The translations under genes were made by a program, and so were the position numbers. A stretch of 64,000 nucleotides of DNA from positions 186,001-250,000 of the IMG/VR virus record IMGVR_UViG_3300027710_000011; one strand, written 5' to 3'. The notes under the pieces were generated by a model, which saw nothing but the letters and a program-made list of their open reading frames with translations, searched no databases and was not told where the DNA came from. Positions 5,528-42,971 of this stretch are shown in pieces. Position 1 is the stretch's first letter, and each line of letters begins with the position of its first letter.

Positions 5528-5616
5528 GTAATGCTTATCCTTTTTTACACGTTCGCTAAGTCAAAGGTCGAATTACCTTTGATCAGAATTTGCGGATTGC
5601 ACTAATCCACAAGTAC

Positions 5617-5633
5617 GTGATATGTAACTGAAA
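5617..5633 (-). promoter_or_regulatory. Putative early promoter TTTCAGTTACATATCAC
   Basis: Motif copy 90 nt upstream of gp68, just downstream of the chmC terminator. Confidence 0.7.
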
Positions 5634-5716
5634 CAAGTTAGCTTTCAGTTGACTCACAGTACAGAAGATAACATTTATATGTTTTTTATTACCTATATAT
5701 GGTAAAAAATTAACAT

Positions 5717-5752
5717 CATAAAAGCCACCGGGGAGTACCCGGTGGCTTTATT
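5717..5752 (-). terminator. Terminator of chmC
   Basis: CATAAAAGCCACCGGG-gagta-CCCGGTGGCTTTATT. Confidence 0.85.
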
Positions 5753-5780
5753 AAGTAACGTTTAAGTTACCAGGACTTGC

Positions 5781-17199: not shown

Positions 17200-17201
17200 C
17201 T

Positions 17202-17262
17202 CATACAGCACCAGGTTAGTAGGGTCGCCACTTCTGTGGGACCTGCTACCTGGAGCTGTATG
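17202..17262. terminator. Long hairpin between convergent genes
   Basis: CATACAGC-accagg...cctgg-a-GCTGTATG. Confidence 0.7.
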
Positions 17263-17277
17263 ACTATATGTCGTCAA

Positions 17278-19419: not shown

Positions 19420-19475
19420 GGTTCTCCTTTTTCTACAAATCATGTCTGGTTCCTGTAAAAAAGAGGCGGCATATT

Positions 19476-19506
19476 AGCCAGAGGGGACTTCCCCTCTGGC
19501 TTTATG
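19476..19506 (-). terminator. Terminator
   Basis: AGCCAGAGGGG-actt-CCCCTCTGGCTTTATG. Confidence 0.75.
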
Positions 19507-20002
19507 TTGTTTCTTTCTGTGGCACAGCTATCTTTCTAGAACCTTCTTGAATTCTGAAAACCATAGCTCTTGTCTCAATCATCTTGCTTGATGCTTTCAA
19601 GAAACTAGGGATGTCCTTGAACTCTACAAAATCCGTCTTGTAATGACTTCCCAAGCGATAAGCTGCATCGCCCCCGCCGTGCATAAACAAGTGTGCTAAG
19701 CAGTAAAGTTCTTTACCATCTTTGGTAAAATAGAACTCATGCTTCTTGTATACGCATAATTGAAGCTGCGTATGGTAGATATTGTCCGAATAATTGGTGA
19801 TGAAGATTCCAACTAAACGTGCTTCGTCGTAAAACGGATTGATGAATTTCTTGATTCTGAACGCTGCTGGCTTAAATCCGTGGTCACGCATCAGCAAGAA
19901 TAACGGATCACGCTTATCAACCAGCGGGTTAATGAACCATTGGTATTTACTTAGTAGCCGCGCTACGAAACTTCTCCACATGTGATTACTCCAGAGTCTC
20001 AC
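19502..20002 (-). CDS. Hypothetical protein
   Basis: 166-aa ORF, start uncertain. Confidence 0.6.
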   Translation of the reverse strand: MRLWSNHMWRSFVARLLSKYQWFINPLVDKRDPLFLLMRDHGFKPAAFRIKKFINPFYDEARLVGIFITNYSDNIYHTQLQLCVYKKHEFYFTKDGKELYCLAHLFMHGGGDAAYRLGSHYKTDFVEFKDIPSFLKASSKMIETRAMVFRIQEGSRKIAVPQKETT

Positions 20003-20014
20003 ATCAAAATAGGC

Positions 20015-20240
20015 AAAAAAATAAAAGGTGATGAAACCCTCAGACCTTTCGGAGCTTCTCGCAGCACACGCTCGAGGGCTCTTAAGATCTGAGGGGAACC
20101 AATTCCATCAGGTGTTGCAAAATGGAACAACCGTTTTCATTTTGCTTCACCAATCCTGATCGAGAAAAAGGATCGAAAACTCTTTCAGGATTGTGATTCG
20201 AAGATAACCAGTCTTCGCTCAAACTATAGTGTCCTATAGA
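20015..20240 (-). ncRNA. Candidate structured non-coding RNA or leader
   Basis: Five or more hairpins in ~220 nt ending in a U-tract (see findings). Confidence 0.45.
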
Positions 20241-20255
20241 TATTTTTTTACGACC

Positions 20256-20669
20256 TTAAGGAATCGGAATTGGATTCAAGCTCACTGTGACGCTGTTGAA
20301 TCCATTCATCAACAAGCATTGACGAACGCGATCAATGTCTGTAGTCTTAGCGTCTTCAATCAGAACATGGATTCTGGTTGTAGCGCGCGGCGTGATTGTG
20401 GTTTGGTTGATCCACGTGATACCGAGAACGGTTTTGATGCCGTTATTCAATGCCACCTTAACGTAGTAATACGCTGTGGCGTCATCAATTGTTCCGGCCG
20501 GCAGATAAGGATAGACTGCGGCGTGCAGTGCATCAATGTCTGCGATCTGACGAGCAGAGTCGGCATCGAGAATACCGAGGATGGTCACATTCGTGTAGTC
20601 ATTCGGGATGACTGTGGAAGGGTAGACTGAAAAGTCGTACACCTTACCTACTTCAACAGGGTAAGTCAT
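20256..20669 (-). CDS. Conserved jumbo-phage hypothetical protein
   Basis: 137 aa (GKVYDFSVYP...VTILGILD...H..VYPYLP). Confidence 0.75.
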   Translation of the reverse strand: MTYPVEVGKVYDFSVYPSTVIPNDYTNVTILGILDADSARQIADIDALHAAVYPYLPAGTIDDATAYYYVKVALNNGIKTVLGITWINQTTITPRATTRIHVLIEDAKTTDIDRVRQCLLMNGFNSVTVSLNPIPIP

Positions 20670-24123: not shown

Positions 24124-24240
24124 TCAAAAAATTGGTGGAGTGAATAAAAATCCACTAGAAGCAGTCAGGGTATTGGTCACTTATTTTAAACCTCTCCTGG
24201 GTGATTCTGGTGGATTCTAGAGGTAAAATAAAAAGAGGGA

Positions 24241-24283
24241 ATAAAACCAGTGTTGCGGGTTAAGCAACACTGGTTTCTTTATG
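24241..24283 (-). terminator. Terminator of phuZ
   Basis: AAACCAGTGTTGC-gggttaa-GCAACACTGGTTT. Confidence 0.85.
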
Positions 24284-24289
24284 CTGTGT

Positions 24290-25291
24290 TTACAGCACGA
24301 TGCCGGAATCAGTCGGCTTGTCGGAGTTGCTCAGGATCGGGCCGTTATCGACGCGGGCTTTGACAGCCTTCTCGATTGCGACCAGACGAGCGCTCATGTC
24401 CTTGGCAACAACGGCCGGCGTGTTTGCCAGCGTGACCAGTGACAGCGGAGCAATGTCCAGGACTTGACGGTTGACCTTTTCGTTCAGGTAACCGATCGAG
24501 CCGTATTCGGGAGTGAAGTTCAGGTCCAGCGTAGCGCCGGGCTTGAGCACCGAGACCACGGTGATGACGTTGCCGGTGGTGATGTCGTCCAAGTTCTCAG
24601 TTTGGTCGGACAGGTAGCGGACCAGGCCGACGACGCGAGGCTTGTAGCTGGTGACCTTGTCGAAGCGCAAGAAGTTGGCCAAGTCCATGCTGTCGAGTTC
24701 CGTATTCTCGCGAGAGAAAACAGTCATCAACGTGGAGACCAGTTCCACAGCGGCACGGTCCACAACAGCACGAGGAGTTTCCTTGCTGTTCTGGAAGTAG
24801 GCCATGACCACAGGCGTTTCGCGCTTCTGAGCAACACCTTCGTACGACTTGAGGGTGTTCAGCGTGTTCTTGATTTCCAGAGCACTGTCGGTGCCGCCGA
24901 TGGTGATGACCACGGTGGGAATGCCGTCGCTCAGCAGTTCGGAAACCAGGGAAGGAGCAATCACACTGCCGGAGCCGCCGTGGGCCGAAGACAGAACGAT
25001 GGCCAAGTCGCCGGGTGGGAACTTCTGGAGGATGGAGCGAACATGACGACTGATCTCTTGGTAGTTTTCGGCACGAACCTTGCCGGAACCATCCATGCCT
25101 TCGAAAACCCAGGTGAACTCGGGCGGGAGGCCTTTGCTGTTGGACAGCGAGGTATCGATGTAGACCGGAGAGATGGTTGCCATCCCCAGTTCTTGTGCGT
25201 TGCGGAAGGGCTCAATCAACTTGGCAACGTTGATCCCCGCACCCCCTGCTGCGTACAGAGTGATGTTGCCTTTGCGTGTTTCAATTGTCAT
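24290..25291 (-). CDS. phuZ: Phage tubulin PhuZ
   Basis: AAGGAGINVA, DTS, GMDGSGK and GGSGS tubulin motifs; short C-tail DSGIVL. Confidence 0.95.
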   Translation of the reverse strand: MTIETRKGNITLYAAGGAGINVAKLIEPFRNAQELGMATISPVYIDTSLSNSKGLPPEFTWVFEGMDGSGKVRAENYQEISRHVRSILQKFPPGDLAIVLSSAHGGSGSVIAPSLVSELLSDGIPTVVITIGGTDSALEIKNTLNTLKSYEGVAQKRETPVVMAYFQNSKETPRAVVDRAAVELVSTLMTVFSRENTELDSMDLANFLRFDKVTSYKPRVVGLVRYLSDQTENLDDITTGNVITVVSVLKPGATLDLNFTPEYGSIGYLNEKVNRQVLDIAPLSLVTLANTPAVVAKDMSARLVAIEKAVKARVDNGPILSNSDKPTDSGIVL

Positions 25292-26269: not shown

Positions 26270-26339
26270 CATAAACGGGGGAGGTAACTCTCCTGTTTAT
26301 GACGTGACAACATAAACCCGGAGACCGAAGTCTCCGGGA
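26270..26339. terminator. Tandem terminators between convergent genes
   Basis: CATAAACGGGGGAG...CTCTCCTGTTTATG and CCCGGAGAC-cgaa-GTCTCCGGG. Confidence 0.8.
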
Positions 26340-29127: not shown

Positions 29128-29140
29128 AAGTCTGAAAAAG

Positions 29141-29168
29141 TAAAGAGGGGGTAAAACCTCTCTTTATG
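29141..29168 (+). terminator. Terminator
   Basis: TAAAGAG(G)GG-gtaaaa-CCTCTCTTTATG. Confidence 0.75.
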
Positions 29169-29403
29169 TTGTCACTTGTAAAACGCTGCTAAGGACCCTA
29201 CAAAGGCCATAGATGAAATAAAAAAGAAAAGTCGAGGGTAGGTAGCTACCCAAATCTGAGTTCAATACAAGCCTTTTTAAAAGGTCACTATGCCAAAAAA
29301 TACTGGCTAGCTTACTAATATAGTTAAAGCTATTTTAACTAAACCTAGTATAATAGGGGGGCCCCAGACCCCCGATAGTATACTAAGAATAATAAAGAGT
29401 ATA

Positions 29404-29445
29404 ATGCGCGTGCGCGCACACATGCGCACGCATACGCGCACGCGT
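29404..29445. repeat. 42-bp perfect alternating purine-pyrimidine tract (Z-DNA-prone)
   Basis: ATGCGCGTGCGCGCACACATGCGCACGCATACGCGCACGCGT. Confidence 0.9.
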
Positions 29446-29492
29446 TCTATAATGAGGGTTTCTTAAAAAGAGAAATTTTTTAAGAGTTAAGC

Positions 29493-29520
29493 GGCTGGGT
29501 AGTAGACCCAGCCTTTTATG
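29493..29520 (+). terminator. Terminator-like hairpin inside the non-coding region
   Basis: GGCTGGGT-agtag-ACCCAGCC-TTTTATG. Confidence 0.65.
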
Positions 29521-29854
29521 CTGAGAAGATGAGATCTTGAAGTTATAGGCTTAGAAAAGGTTTTAAGAGGTCTTAGAGCTATTTTCGTTGCTTAGATGAG
29601 CAACGATGAGTCTGAGAGAAAAGAAAGCCGTATAGACGGTTTAAACGAATCTAGCCAATTGACAGACCAACTACCAGAAAAAGGACTTCGTCCAAAGTCT
29701 TGAGAGATTACCCTCCCCCAAAGCCCCCTCCCGCGAAACCGGGGCGGGGCGGCTTTTGACTTTACTTCCCTTTTCCTTTGTGGAGGTACTCACAACACCT
29801 CTTCGCCGTTCATGAGTGGCGGCAACCTGAAACAACGTTACTGAGGCGAACGAA

Positions 29855-41165: not shown

Positions 41166-42872
41166 ATGGCAAATGATCCAATCATCTCAACATCAGGCAT
41201 TACTGGGTCTGACGGCATCACGCCGATCTACGATCCAGATGGTCGCTTTCAAATCTGGAACAAAAACGAAATCTTCATGGGCCCAACAGCTCCTGGCGAT
41301 AAGCGGTACGTTCCAAAGATCGATGACATGGTTGTCGAACTGGTCCCTTTGACCTGGTACCGCGTGACCAATATCGATCTTGCTACATTGATCCCGACTC
41401 TGGACGAGCTGGAAACCGTAGCATCCGGCGGTGATCCTACCGACAAGGATCTGCTCCTCGGTCCTGGACCTGGTACGCCCAGCGATACGTATCGCGTGTA
41501 TTTGGACACATCCGTTGTTCCGCACGCAATCCGTGTCGATGCTCGTTGCTACATTCGTGGTAGCGAGAATATGTACGCACGTCTGTTCTTGGGTTCGGAT
41601 ATCTCCAGCGAAGCCAACATCATCAGTTTGCAGTACGACAGTGCTGGTAACATCATCGGGAACAAAATCCCGCTGGAGTTGGCTGAGATCAACAACACGA
41701 CGAACATCGCTACCAAAGTCATGCCGACCGCATACACCATGCGGGAGATCCAAGATGATGAGCGTGTTACGTTTGTGTCGTACTCGGCAGACAATCGCAT
41801 CACTTCCAAGCGTCAGTTGATCTTGGAAAACTCGGCATTCATTGCCAGTGCGAACATCTCTACCAAGTACATCGTTGGCATCTCGCTGAAGTGCCCGTTC
41901 TTGTCGGCTGCCGATCCGCATCGCATCGATTTGCCGCAGAACGTGCTGCTCACCGGTTTGAACATGATCGGTGTGGTGACGTATTCGGATGGCTCAACAA
42001 ACGAGCTGCCTGTGGACGGTACCAAGTTCAAGATGCTGGGTATGGAGTCGTACCTGACAACCATCGTCGGCCATCAAGCTGGTATTGTGTTGCGTTACCA
42101 GTTGTCTGCCAACGAAATCTCGTACGGCAACCAAGTGGGTGCAGTTCCGTTCATCTCGCAAGAGTACAAGATCGTGACTGCTCAGGAAGACAACGCATAC
42201 AGCGTCAAGCTGTTCGGTTACCCAGTGTGGCAGAATTCCGTCGCAGGCTACACCTTGCGCTGGTTCCTGTACAACGCGCTGCGTAACGTTGTTTACGACG
42301 TCACCAATTCGATTCAGCACAGCCCCGCCGCTGCTCCGTTCCAACCTAAGCTCTACGGTGCCCTGCAGACCGTCGTGGTTAGTGTGAACCTGCAAGACGT
42401 CAATGGTTCGTATCGCAACTACCGCCATGCTCAAACCCAGCAGTTGATTCTCTGGGGTGAAGGTACGATGCGTACAACCAACTGGACGATTCTGTTCGAT
42501 CAGAATCAGAACCCGGTGTACGGTTTGAATCTGCACGCCGACCTGACGTTTGTGAACTACAACTACTACAAGTTGAAGTTCGGCACTGGTGCTCAAACCA
42601 AGGCGGAATGGCTCAAGCGTTTGTACTACGACTCCAAGCCAATCATCGACCAGTTCAAAGAGCAGACGCCGCCGGCGCCTACTCACTTCCGGTTGCGGGT
42701 TGGTACGCAGGACTACGAGTACAGCGTGGACGCATGGAACGACGAGATCATCGTGGGCAACGGTCTGAACGACAACGACACCTTGATCATCTACTTCATC
42801 AGCAAGAACCAATCGACGGATCTTCAATTGTCCGTGGCTGGCTTGCCGGTGTATCAGGTAACAGGAAACTGA
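41166..42872 (+). CDS. Virion structural protein (gp26-like, tail/baseplate)
   Basis: 568 aa, beta-rich; synteny. Confidence 0.75.
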   Translation: MANDPIISTSGITGSDGITPIYDPDGRFQIWNKNEIFMGPTAPGDKRYVPKIDDMVVELVPLTWYRVTNIDLATLIPTLDELETVASGGDPTDKDLLLGPGPGTPSDTYRVYLDTSVVPHAIRVDARCYIRGSENMYARLFLGSDISSEANIISLQYDSAGNIIGNKIPLELAEINNTTNIATKVMPTAYTMREIQDDERVTFVSYSADNRITSKRQLILENSAFIASANISTKYIVGISLKCPFLSAADPHRIDLPQNVLLTGLNMIGVVTYSDGSTNELPVDGTKFKMLGMESYLTTIVGHQAGIVLRYQLSANEISYGNQVGAVPFISQEYKIVTAQEDNAYSVKLFGYPVWQNSVAGYTLRWFLYNALRNVVYDVTNSIQHSPAAAPFQPKLYGALQTVVVSVNLQDVNGSYRNYRHAQTQQLILWGEGTMRTTNWTILFDQNQNPVYGLNLHADLTFVNYNYYKLKFGTGAQTKAEWLKRLYYDSKPIIDQFKEQTPPAPTHFRLRVGTQDYEYSVDAWNDEIIVGNGLNDNDTLIIYFISKNQSTDLQLSVAGLPVYQVTGN

Positions 42873-42881
42873 TGTCTGAAA

Positions 42882-42971
42882 ATAAAAGGAGAGGGAAACC
42901 TCTCCTTTTATGCTGTTTCAAACAAAAAAGAAAAGAGAGCATAAACGGAGGCCTGATGGCCTCCGTTTATT
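42882..42971. terminator. Tandem terminators between convergent genes
   Basis: ATAAAAGGAGAGG-gaaa-CCTCTCCTTTTATG and CATAAACGGAGGCC-tgat-GGCCTCCGTTTAT. Confidence 0.85.

What the first reader, a model, noticed from the sequence alone, without database searches (positions are those of the whole stretch)
20015..20240. Hairpin-dense 220-nt intergenic element, candidate structured ncRNA
Paired arms seen: CTATAG/CTATAG (20224-20239), CGAAGA/TCTTCG (20199-20217), CAATCCTGA/TCAGGATTG (20151-20193), GCAAAATG/CATTTTGC (20117-20145) and CCCTCAGA/TCTGAGGG (20038-20095). On the minus strand the last is extended by UGAUGGAA/UUUCAUCA, contains a CC-GAAA-GG loop and ends in a U-tract. This is far more structure than a terminator needs and matches no family I recognise.
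Basis: partly seen in the sequence, partly recalled or inferred. Interest (0 to 1): 0.6.

Follow-up and report, generated by a model that had tools for sequence, protein, structure and literature searches.

The report
Conserved structured RNA before polymerase genes
The hairpin-rich spacer is a real, evolutionarily conserved folded RNA of about 205-218 bases in an uncultivated nucleus-forming-type giant phage; it sits just upstream of a small unknown gene and the DNA polymerase gene, matches no catalogued RNA family, and most likely acts as a regulatory leader that ends in a terminator-like hairpin.

Summary
The spacer folds far better than shuffles (z -4.7 and -5.9). The window comes from a 276.8-kb phiKZ-like (chimallivirus-type) phage. 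The element lies on the minus strand, the gene-sense strand, between an SH3DP gene (the phiKZ gp049 homologue) and a 159-aa ORF that precedes the divergent family-B DNA polymerase gene.

Five further metagenomic lineages (68-94% SH3DP identity) keep the same gene order and a gap of about 270 nt. Across these six lineages:
- 62 base pairs are 94% maintained, against 35-45% in slid controls.
- 24 pairs show compensatory double changes (0 of 500 shuffles reach this).
- G.U cells outnumber A.C cells 30 to 5, which points to an RNA on the sense strand.
- Loops are more conserved than stems.

The CTATAG hairpin and the CC-GAAA-GG loop are not.

The element is single-copy, has no Rfam match and no conserved ORF. 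It ends in a conserved U-tract 30 nt before the ORF159 start codon.

Best reading: a leader or attenuator RNA, possibly released as a short RNA, of the kind mapped experimentally in phiKZ. Its function and its ends are untested, because no RNA data could be obtained.

The parts
20256..20669 (-). Upstream gene: SH3DP protein (137 aa), homologue of phiKZ gp049, PhiPA3 gp046 and 201phi2-1 gp81. Its stop codon is 26 nt before the conserved core.
   Evidence: Pfam PF20287 at E 1.2e-32; phrog_3235; PhiPA3 annotation notes.
20230..20255 (-). Possible internal promoter of the phiKZ middle type (AT-rich tract about 23-24 nt before the start of conservation). This is inference only.
   Evidence: 46-65% identity to diverged relatives against 74-82% for the core; segment comparison; phiKZ middle-promoter descriptions in PMC7598289 and PMC8244752.
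20012..20229 (-). Conserved core of the RNA element (218 nt, covariance model R1), single copy in the genome.
   Evidence: R1 scores 190-252 bits in all full-length relatives; one hit in the 276.8-kb genome; covariation statistics.
20199..20217 (-). Helix P2 (6 bp) with a 7-nt loop CUGGUUA; UGGU is invariant.
   Evidence: 95% of cells paired; 2 of 6 pairs carry compensatory changes, for example G-C to A-U.
20154..20190 (-). Helix P3 (11 bp with an internal loop) capped by a 15-16-nt loop (20165-20179) whose U-runs and AUCC core are invariant. The loop is complementary to the phage's commonest ribosome-binding sequence, AAAAAGGA(U).
   Evidence: 8 of 11 pairs carry compensatory changes; loop invariance; RBS 5-mer spectrum and anti-loop matches near start codons.
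20111..20151 (-). Helix P4 (16 bp in three stacked segments) with an apical loop containing the invariant GGUUGU. The invariant UUGGUG sits at the P3/P4 junction.
   Evidence: 8 of 16 pairs carry compensatory changes; 92% of cells paired.
20029..20110 (-). Helix P5, an 82-nt irregular hairpin. It has an 8-bp basal helix, an invariant 7-nt bulge UUGGUUC (20096-20102), a 10-bp main helix and an 11-bp apical part.
   Evidence: 100% of cells paired in all three segments; 6 pairs carry compensatory changes, including a double swap in the basal helix.
20012..20028 (-). Conserved tail: a 2-3-nt spacer followed by UUU(U)AU6-7 and G(C/U)C. This is a terminator-like U-tract directly after P5.
   Evidence: Conserved in all five full-length lineages. 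It resembles the genome's usual 'hairpin + UUUAUG' module but reads TATT where that module reads TATG.
19982..20011 (-). 30-nt conserved stretch carrying the GGAG ribosome-binding site of ORF159. No recognisable phage promoter motif lies in it.
   Evidence: 73-77% identity to diverged relatives; alignment; the promoter motifs mapped are absent here.
19502..19981 (-). ORF159, a clade-specific protein of unknown function and the gene immediately downstream of the element.
   Evidence: Homologues of 159-162 aa at 43-52% identity in every relative; no Pfam, PHROG or Atlas lead; the AlphaFold model is poor, pLDDT 47.
19462..19501 (-). Standard 'GC hairpin + TATG' module between ORF159 and the polymerase gene. 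Inferred to be the terminator of the ORF159 unit and a late-type promoter for the polymerase gene.
   Evidence: Hairpin at 19476-19501; followed on the minus strand by AATATGCCGCC, conserved as T(T/A)TATG(C/T)CGCC in L002, L005 and L007; TATG late promoter of phiKZ (PMC7598289).
17278..19443 (-). Divergent family-B DNA polymerase gene. The relatives' 713-aa gene calls suggest the true start is about 24 nt downstream of the first ATG.
   Evidence: PF20286 at E 6e-237; phrog_2927; gene calls in relatives; leader sequences.

Best explanation
Shown: the spacer encodes a conserved, sense-strand structured RNA. It has four helices (P2 to P5), invariant loops and a terminator-like U-tract at its end. 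Inferred mechanism: it is a cis-acting leader or attenuator. Transcripts arrive from the upstream late-type operon, whose hairpin-TATG promoter lies near window 24278 and which runs through SH3DP, and/or start at an AT-rich internal promoter just after the SH3DP stop codon. The RNA folds as it is made. The basal helix of P5 plus the U-tract stops a fraction of polymerases, releasing a short RNA of about 205-220 nt. The transcripts that read through carry ORF159. The invariant single-stranded motifs would be contact sites for a factor (protein, RNA or small ligand) that sets how much read-through or translation occurs. These motifs are the UGGU-type loops in P2, P4, P5 and at the P3/P4 junction, and the U-rich AUCCUUUUU loop of P3. 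This is the architecture described for the '5'UTR-derived ncRNA candidates' made by premature termination in phiKZ.
For: Structure and strand: 62 pairs are 94.4% paired against 35-45% in slid controls, 24 pairs carry double changes, and 0 of 500 shuffles reach the observed values. There are 30 G.U cells against 5 A.C cells. The structure conservation index is about 1.0, and in the three most diverged lineages the sense strand is 10-15 kcal/mol more stable than the antisense strand.

Selection: core identity is 74-82%, against 47-53% at third codon positions of SH3DP and 65% for ORF159. Against the closest relative it is 97.7%, while the flanking genes are 85-91%. 62 of 99 unpaired columns are invariant.

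Position: the gene order SH3DP, gap, ORF159, polymerase holds in every relative. The U-tract is conserved and lies only 30 nt before the ORF159 start codon. Neither of the genome's recognisable promoter motifs lies in between, so ORF159 expression appears to depend on passing P5 and the U-tract.

No usual terminator: the SH3DP gene lacks the genome's standard hairpin-TATG terminator module, of which about 35 copies exist elsewhere.

Analogy: the phiKZ and PhiPA3 spacers between SH3DP and the polymerase gene (201 and 184 nt) also hold a second hairpin followed by a U-tract. The conserved leader at window 24124-24289 has the same design. Premature termination in 5' UTRs that yields short RNAs is documented for phiKZ (PMC10914365).
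Against: No transcript data exist, so the 5' end, the 3' end and termination at the U-tract are all inferred. No conserved alternative (antiterminator) pairing was found: the UUCCAU/AUGGAA alternative seen in the window is absent from L007 and L009 (read by eye from the sequences). P5 is as conserved as the rest of the element, which is unusual for a mere expression platform. Its base is A-U-rich and sits 2-3 nt from the U-tract, and the simple terminator scan did not call it. The putative internal promoter motif does not recur in the genome. How the phage RNA polymerases respond to such a hairpin is unknown.
Confidence: 0.45

Rival explanations
1. A stand-alone, trans-acting small RNA or ribonucleoprotein scaffold. 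It would have its own AT-rich promoter after the SH3DP stop codon and its own terminator (P5 plus the U-tract). Its exposed loops would bind other molecules. For example, the P3 loop could pair with AAAAAGGA(U)-type ribosome-binding sites of phage mRNAs, including that of the polymerase gene, and the repeated UGGU loops could bind a protein.
For: Loops are more conserved than stems. The P3 loop is complementary to the most frequent ribosome-binding 5-mers of this genome, AAGGA, AAAAG and AAAGG. 4 of the 10 AAAAAGGAT sites lie within 25 nt of a start codon, against about 0.2 expected. The polymerase ribosome-binding site reads GAAAAAGGAGAA in L002, the window's closest relative. The AT-rich tract lies about 23-24 nt before the onset of conservation, matching the description of phiKZ middle promoters. 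A discrete RNA released by termination could also act in trans, so this rival overlaps with the best explanation.
Against: Complementarity to a generic ribosome-binding consensus is not specific. The putative promoter motif is not repeated elsewhere in the genome. No expression data exist. The element keeps a strict position next to ORF159 in all lineages, although overall gene order is conserved in this clade anyway.
Confidence: 0.25
2. A purely structural 3'-end or intercistronic element. It would be an elaborate terminator and stabiliser that protects the upstream SH3DP-operon mRNA from 3' exonucleases and lowers ORF159 transcription constitutively, with no sensing or trans function.
For: It occupies the place where the genome's other transcription units carry a hairpin-UUUAUG module. 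It ends in UUUUAU plus a U-run.
Against: A stabiliser or terminator needs one stable hairpin, yet four helices and 62 invariant unpaired positions are kept. The element is more conserved than the flanking genes.
Confidence: 0.12
3. An RNA-processing element or a new self-cleaving ribozyme that separates the upstream and downstream cistrons.
For: The multi-helix junction has invariant unpaired nucleotides. Phages are rich in small ribozymes (general knowledge).
Against: There is no match to any ribozyme family in Rfam, even at permissive E-values. No pseudoknot or known catalytic core is recognisable.
Confidence: 0.04
4. A DNA-level element next to the replication genes, such as a replication origin, cruciform or protein-binding site.
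For: It is adjacent to the polymerase module. Both strands fold well in the window copy. The A-run is swapped for a T-run in one lineage, which suggests an AT-tract that acts as DNA.
Against: Stems tolerate G.U 30 times but A.C only 5 times, which a DNA cruciform would not allow. In diverged lineages the antisense fold is clearly weaker. There is no GC-skew inflection at 206 kb. There are no iterons or tandem repeats.
Confidence: 0.03

Closest known systems
5'UTR-derived ncRNA candidates and premature-termination leaders of phage phiKZ (Putzeys et al. 2024, PMC10914365; two were also seen by Grad-seq and dRNA-seq)
   Same: Same phage group. A structured segment of 100-200 nt lies between a promoter and a gene start and ends in a hairpin plus U-tract. 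The phiKZ and PhiPA3 spacers between SH3DP and the polymerase gene themselves contain such a hairpin and U-tract.
   Different: There is no detectable sequence or covariance-model similarity to phiKZ, PhiPA3, RP31, FLC1-1B or FLC9. This element is larger, with four helices, has invariant loops, and is backed by covariation rather than by transcript mapping. It precedes a clade-specific ORF, not the polymerase gene itself.
Transcription-attenuating riboswitches and protein-dependent leaders (general class)
   Same: A conserved multi-helix domain with invariant junction and loop nucleotides is followed by a hairpin, a U-tract, a ribosome-binding site and a start codon, all in the sense orientation.
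   Different: No conserved antiterminator alternative was found. No ligand or binding protein is known. The terminator-like helix is itself highly conserved. There is no match to any Rfam riboswitch.
T-box leader antiterminator bulge (7-nt bulge with UGGN that pairs with the tRNA 3' NCCA end). This is recalled from general knowledge and is a lead only.
   Same: P5 carries an invariant 7-nt bulge, UUGGUUC, between two helices. Three further conserved UGGU/CGGU motifs sit in loops.
   Different: No Rfam family, T-box included, matched. Here the bulge lies in the terminator-like helix, not in an antiterminator. T-boxes belong mainly to Gram-positive bacteria, whereas this phage's nearest cultured relatives infect Ralstonia and Burkholderia.
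Chimallivirus 'A-rich + GC hairpin + TTTATGYYGT' module (terminator joined to the TATG late promoter of the non-virion RNA polymerase)
   Same: The element ends with a hairpin followed by UUUUAU, as the roughly 35 modules of this genome and those of phiKZ, PhiPA3 and RP31 do.
   Different: It reads TATT where the modules read TATG, and all four bases of TATG are required in phiKZ (PMC7598289). Its hairpin is 82 nt long and irregular, and three further conserved helices precede it.
Structured spacers of 426-437 nt upstream of a small ORF and the polymerase gene in Ralstonia phages RP31/RP12 and FLC1-1B
   Same: Same relative position. Read by eye, the motifs come in the same order: a hairpin with a CUGGU(C/U) loop, a hairpin with a U-rich UCCUUU loop, (G/U)UGGUG(A/G)AGC, then CG(G/A)UUGUU. 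The RP31 spacer folds well (z -5.9). RP31 and FLC1-1B show many paired-site double changes.
   Different: Not significant by nhmmer or by either covariance model (best E 0.16-0.31). These spacers are twice as long. Their downstream small ORF is not homologous to ORF159. Homology is unproven.

Membership tests
Any Rfam 15 family | Score at or above the family's gathering threshold | tested here: not met
   0 matches in the whole window. The best permissive hit is MIR474 at 19.6 bits against a threshold of 48, E 0.32. There are 0 hits at E up to 1 in three divergent copies.
Conserved structured RNA (generic criterion) | Base pairs maintained by compensatory substitutions across lineages, beyond controls | tested here: met
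   24 of 62 pairs carry double changes; 94.4% of cells are paired against 35-45% when slid; 0 of 500 shuffles reach the observed values. SCI is about 1.0. Caveat: only six lineages were available, and the alignment was fitted to the model.
Conserved structured RNA (generic criterion) | Strand-specific wobble pairs (G.U tolerated, A.C not) | tested here: met
   30 G.U cells against 5 A.C cells on the window's minus strand.
Intrinsic (factor-independent) terminator | Stable stem-loop immediately followed by a U-tract on the transcribed strand | tested here: inconclusive
   The P5 basal helix is followed by a 2-3-nt spacer and U4AU7, conserved in five lineages. However, the base of the stem is A-U/G.U-rich, the hairpin is 82 nt long, and the consensus scan did not call it. 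Termination itself was not measured.
Riboswitch or attenuator leader | Mutually exclusive terminator and antiterminator pairings conserved across lineages | tested here: not met
   The only alternative pairing seen in the window (UUCCAU with AUGGAA) is not conserved in L007 or L009 (read by eye from the sequences). The GGUG segment can pair with either of two CAC segments, but the register is not consistent.
Riboswitch or attenuator leader | Located in the 5' leader of the controlled gene, sense strand, with a conserved sensing domain | tested here: met
   The same position, 30 nt upstream of the ORF159 start codon, holds in every lineage. Neither of the genome's recognisable promoter motifs lies between the U-tract and the ribosome-binding site.
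phiKZ-type 5'UTR-derived ncRNA | Mapped transcription start, plus abundant short transcripts ending inside the 5' UTR | not testable with these tools
Type III toxin-antitoxin locus (ToxIN-like: repeat RNA, terminator, toxin gene) | Tandem direct repeats in the RNA gene and a ToxN/AbiQ-family toxin downstream | tested here: not met
   There are no tandem repeats. ORF159 has no Pfam hit at E up to 0.1. Only the order 'RNA, U-tract, roughly 160-aa ORF' resembles this locus type.
Repeated or mobile palindromic elements (REP/MITE-like) | Multiple copies in the genome | tested here: not met
   One copy by BLAST and one by covariance model in the 276.8-kb genome.
Chimallivirus hairpin-TATG terminator/promoter module | GC-rich hairpin directly followed by TTTATG(Y)(Y)GT | tested here: not met
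   The element's tail reads TTTTATTTTTTTGCC, while about 35 genuine modules were mapped elsewhere.
Protein-coding small ORF | A reading frame that stays open and in register in all lineages | tested here: not met
   No frame is open across the core in all five full-length copies. Indels of 1-2 nt occur between lineages.

The most novel reading that the evidence does not exclude
The element is a new class of phage regulatory RNA, either sensing or trans-acting. One version: a riboswitch-like or protein-responsive leader that ties expression of the replication module to an unknown signal. The other: a released small RNA whose invariant AUCCUUUUU loop pairs with the phage's own AAAAAGGA-type ribosome-binding sites, including that of the DNA polymerase gene, to retime translation, while its four UGGU-type loops recruit a specific protein or the 3'-CCA ends of tRNAs. 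If the by-eye resemblance to the RP12/RP31/FLC1-1B spacers is true homology, the family would extend to cultured Ralstonia jumbo phages and would be experimentally tractable.
Probability: 0.2. Interest if true: 0.75.

Novelty: new member of a known kind. Interest (0 to 1): 0.5.

Why it matters
Non-coding RNAs of nucleus-forming jumbo phages are almost unexplored. The phiKZ candidates rest on transcript mapping, and the work read here reports only sequence conservation for such candidates, not covariation. This element is the reverse case. It has strong comparative evidence: four helices, 24 covarying pairs, strand-specific wobble pairs, and loops more conserved than the neighbouring genes. It sits at a meaningful place, between the polymerase-associated SH3DP gene and the polymerase gene. 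It therefore offers a defined RNA, with defined loops to mutate, for asking how these phages regulate their replication genes after transcription. A covariance model is also available to find more members as metagenomes grow. It remains one clade-specific motif of unknown function, so the interest is moderate rather than high.

Tried and rejected
- **Close relatives in other collections.** None were found in IMG/VR or in GenBank phages.
- **Pattern scans.** A scan of JGI metagenomes returned only the window's own contig plus five chance hits. A scan of GTDB genomes returned two chance hits, both rejected by the model.
- **Three further lineages** (P0006, P0007 and P0010, with P0015 and P0016 on the same contigs) are on record, but their DNA could not be fetched.
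- **ORF159.** Pfam, PHROGs and the Atlas gave nothing. The AlphaFold2 model has pLDDT 47, too poor for a fold search, so none was run. ORF159 is not homologous to the RP31 and FLC1-1B small ORFs.
- **Homology to other chimallivirus spacers.** Comparison with the spacers of RP31, FLC1-1B, FLC9, phiKZ and PhiPA3 was not significant with nhmmer, the full model R1 or the half model R2.
- **Replication origin.** There is no GC-skew signal.
- **Own promoter.** The early-promoter-like motif (CATATCAC type) and the TATG module are both absent from the element. The A-run + TAC-like motif is not recurrent in the genome.
- **Helices seen only in the window's fold.** The A-run/U-run closing helix and hairpin 1 are not conserved.
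- **Targets complementary to the P2, P4 and P5 loops.** Nothing convincing was found near start codons.
- **Complex prediction** was not used, because no protein-protein claim is made.

Full report
**Observation**

The region is the spacer between two minus-strand genes. The upstream gene ends at 20256. The downstream 159-aa ORF starts with an ATG at 19981-19979. The 273-nt spacer folds at -88.9 kcal/mol on the minus strand (z -4.71) and -86 kcal/mol on the plus strand (z -5.86), and none of 200 dinucleotide shuffles does as well.

Stability alone is not special here. I made a rough gene call on the whole genome. Among the 32 gaps of 150 nt or more, about 8-10 have z below -6. In most of them the signal comes from one long GC-rich terminator hairpin. 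This spacer differs in having several medium-sized hairpins.

**Genome and neighbourhood**

The window is bases 186001-250000 of a 276,772-bp virus record. The upstream gene is an SH3DP protein (PF20287, 'SH3 fold domain associated with phage DNA polymerases'). It is the homologue of phiKZ gp049 and PhiPA3 gp046. Beyond ORF159 lies a divergent family-B DNA polymerase gene (PF20286). The nearest cultured phages are Burkholderia phage FLC9 and Ralstonia phages FLC1-1B and RP12/RP31, at 51-53% polymerase identity and below 40% SH3DP identity. phiKZ-type phages are at about 36-38%. The phage is therefore an uncultivated phiKZ-like (chimallivirus-type) jumbo phage.

**Relatives**

A word-based protein search found SH3DP proteins at 68-94% identity in Logan and ENA metagenome assemblies. 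Every contig that could be read shows the same order: SH3DP, a gap of about 261-282 nt, an ORF of 159-162 aa, then the polymerase gene. ORF159 is a real but fast-evolving gene, at 43-52% identity.

The spacers align over their whole length. Inter-anchor segment lengths are almost constant.

| Region | Identity to three diverged lineages | Identity to closest relative (L002) |
|---|---|---|
| Element core | 74-82% | 97.7% |
| SH3DP gene | 71-75% | 85% |
| SH3DP third codon positions | 47-53% | 68% |
| ORF159 | 65% | 91% |

The element is under stronger constraint than its neighbours.

**Structure**

I built a covariance model (R1: 218 positions, 62 pairs) from seven distinct sequences representing six lineages, two of them partial. 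I then realigned the sequences to the model.
- 94.4% of pair cells are standard pairs, against 35-45% when the 3' partners are slid by 1-3 columns.
- 24 pairs show changes on both sides.
- None of 500 shuffles reaches the observed percentage paired, double-change counts or covariation score.
- Every helix (P2, P3, P4, and the three segments of P5) has at least one compensatory pair. P3 and P4 have eight each.
- The alifold energy equals the mean single-sequence energy, so SCI is about 1.0.
- 30 cells are G.U and only 5 are A.C.
- In the three most diverged lineages the sense strand folds 10-15 kcal/mol better than the antisense strand.

The selected structure is therefore an RNA on the window's minus strand, not a DNA cruciform and not an antisense RNA. 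No reading frame stays open in all lineages. Unpaired columns are more often invariant than paired ones, 62 of 99 against 64 of 124.

Caveats: only six lineages were available, and the alignment was fitted to the model, which favours it. The slid controls and the strand asymmetry argue that the signal is real.

**Anatomy** (window coordinates, minus strand)
- P2: 20217-20199, with a 7-nt loop CUGGUUA.
- P3: 20190-20154, with a 15-16-nt loop UUUUCGAUCCUUUUU. The loop's closing stem covaries while the U-runs and AUCC core of the loop are invariant.
- P3/P4 junction: the invariant UUGGUG.
- P4: 20151-20111, with a loop containing the invariant GGUUGU.
- P5: 20110-20029. It has an 8-bp basal helix supported by a double GA/UC to AG/CU swap, an invariant 7-nt bulge UUGGUUC, a 10-bp helix and an 11-bp apical part.
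- Tail: a conserved CC-UUUUAUUUUUUU-GCC.

In L009/L010 the A-run is a T-run.

**What it is not**
- It is not in Rfam.
- It is not repeated in the genome.
- It is not a tandem-repeat RNA of a type III toxin-antitoxin locus.
- It does not lie at a GC-skew turning point.
- It is not found in IMG/VR, JGI metagenomes or GTDB genomes with a stringent pattern.

**Transcriptional context**

Two sequence modules recur in this genome.
1. An early-promoter-like motif ending in CATATCAC. It has 19 copies, 17 of them on the minus strand, usually 40-100 nt before a gene.
2. A module 'A-rich, GC hairpin, TTTATG(Y)(Y)GT'. It has about 35 copies, with all twelve strict matches intergenic. The same module follows the SH3DP gene of phiKZ and PhiPA3 and occurs in RP31.

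TATG overlapping the start site is the late-promoter signature of the phiKZ non-virion RNA polymerase (PMC7598289). I therefore infer that these modules are terminators joined to late promoters.

One such module lies between ORF159 and the polymerase gene in all lineages. Another opens the operon that runs down to SH3DP; its leader, window 24124-24289, is 86% conserved and also contains a long hairpin plus a U-tract.

After SH3DP there is no such module. The element stands in its place, and its tail reads TATT where the module reads TATG. Only 30 conserved nucleotides, carrying a GGAG ribosome-binding site, separate the U-tract from the ORF159 start codon, and neither promoter motif occurs there.

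The 5' flank of the element carries an AT-tract about 23-24 nt before the point where strong conservation begins. This matches the loose description of phiKZ middle promoters: an AT-rich motif near -24, or an A-rich repeat plus TACT near -22. The motif does not recur in this genome, so an internal promoter remains a guess.

**Mechanism**

The best-supported reading is a sense-strand leader or attenuator RNA. RNA made from the upstream operon, or from an internal promoter, folds into P2-P5. P5 with the U-tract stops part of the transcription. Read-through supplies ORF159. The short product would correspond to the '5'UTR-derived ncRNA candidates' generated by premature termination that long-read transcriptomics found in phiKZ: 17 candidates, some confirmed by Northern blot (PMC10914365). 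The invariant loops imply a specific partner.

Two observations may point to that partner, but neither is proof.
- The P3 loop is complementary to AAAAAGGA(U). This is the commonest type of ribosome-binding site in this genome and, in L002 (the window's closest relative), that of the polymerase gene.
- UGGU-like motifs recur in four exposed positions.

A conserved antiterminator alternative was not found, and this is the main weakness of a riboswitch-type model. A trans-acting small RNA, a passive terminator or stabiliser, a processing element and a DNA-level element are kept as rivals with decreasing weight.

**Wider family**

phiKZ and PhiPA3 have spacers of 201 and 184 nt between SH3DP and the polymerase gene. 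Each holds a hairpin-TATG module followed by a second hairpin and a U-tract. RP31 and FLC1-1B have structured spacers of 437 and 426 nt before a small ORF and the polymerase gene. FLC9 has a 536-nt spacer directly before the polymerase gene.

RP31 and FLC1-1B align with many paired double changes. By eye they show the same order of motifs as this element. Neither nhmmer nor the two covariance models gives a significant hit; the best E-values are 0.16-0.31, although some of those weak hits fall in the matching spacers. Long structured leaders ahead of the polymerase module thus look like a general habit of this phage group. Homology of this element beyond its own clade is not shown.

**Limits**

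No RNA-level data could be obtained. The host is unknown. ORF159 has no recognisable function: its model has pLDDT 47, so no fold search was attempted.

**Verdict**

The element is a new, clade-specific RNA motif of a known general kind (phage leader or UTR-derived RNA), and its mechanism is still inferred.

Noticed in passing
Genome-wide; in the window for example 19476-19511, 24240-24290, 26280-26330, 29140-29175 and 42870-42920: A recurrent module 'ATAAA-like A-rich run, GC-rich hairpin, TTTATG(Y)(Y)GT'. It has about 35 copies, and all 12 strict matches are intergenic. The same module follows gp049 in phiKZ and occurs in PhiPA3 and RP31. It probably combines a terminator with the TATG late promoter of the non-virion RNA polymerase.
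   Followed up: partly
Window 466, 5624, 15879, 25409 and 46592 (minus strand), plus 14 more sites in the genome: A conserved motif of about 17 nt ending in CATATCAC, often preceded by TTTCAG or a T-run. It has 19 copies, 17 on the minus strand, typically 40-100 nt upstream of a gene. It is the likely early (virion RNA polymerase) promoter of this phage.
   Followed up: partly
Window 24124-24289 (minus strand); L002:364-571, L005:409-617, L008:413-617: The leader of the operon that ends with SH3DP is 86% identical among three diverged lineages. It contains a hairpin-TATG module, followed by a long-range hairpin (CTCTAGAATCCAC ... CTTCTAGTG) and a U-tract. This is a second attenuator-like conserved leader.
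   Followed up: partly
L002:7443-8213, L005:7486-8067; the matching place in the window is about 17200-17277: A gene with NUMOD3 and I-TevI DNA-binding domains (homing-endonuclease-like) lies just downstream of the polymerase gene in some relatives. It is absent from the window and from L007, so this is a presence/absence polymorphism of a selfish gene.
   Followed up: no
Window 29128-29670: A 543-nt spacer between a plus-strand gene and a minus-strand gene that converge on it. It has many hairpins (z -6 and -9.8) and a run of about 40 nt of alternating purine-pyrimidine (GCGCGTGCGCGCACAC...).
   Followed up: no
Window 5528-5780 (minus strand): Another multi-hairpin spacer of 253 nt (z -9.4). 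It holds a terminator-TATG module, an early-promoter-like motif and three more hairpins before a gene whose ribosome-binding site is AAAAAGGAT.
   Followed up: no
L019:5728-6164 (RP31), L024:2276-2701 (FLC1-1B), L023:2453-2988 (FLC9): Cultured Ralstonia and Burkholderia jumbo phages have structured non-coding spacers of 426-536 nt ahead of the polymerase module. RP31 and FLC1-1B share blocks and apparent compensatory changes. Homology to the window element is possible but unproven.
   Followed up: partly
L010:946-1713: In this lineage the ORF159 homologue diverges after about residue 125 and stays open to the end of the contig (256 aa). This could be a fusion, a frameshift or an assembly chimera.
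   Followed up: no
Genome 112133-112207 (outside the window): ARAGORN finds only one tRNA gene (Thr, anticodon TGT) in the whole 276.8-kb genome, and none in the window.
   Followed up: no
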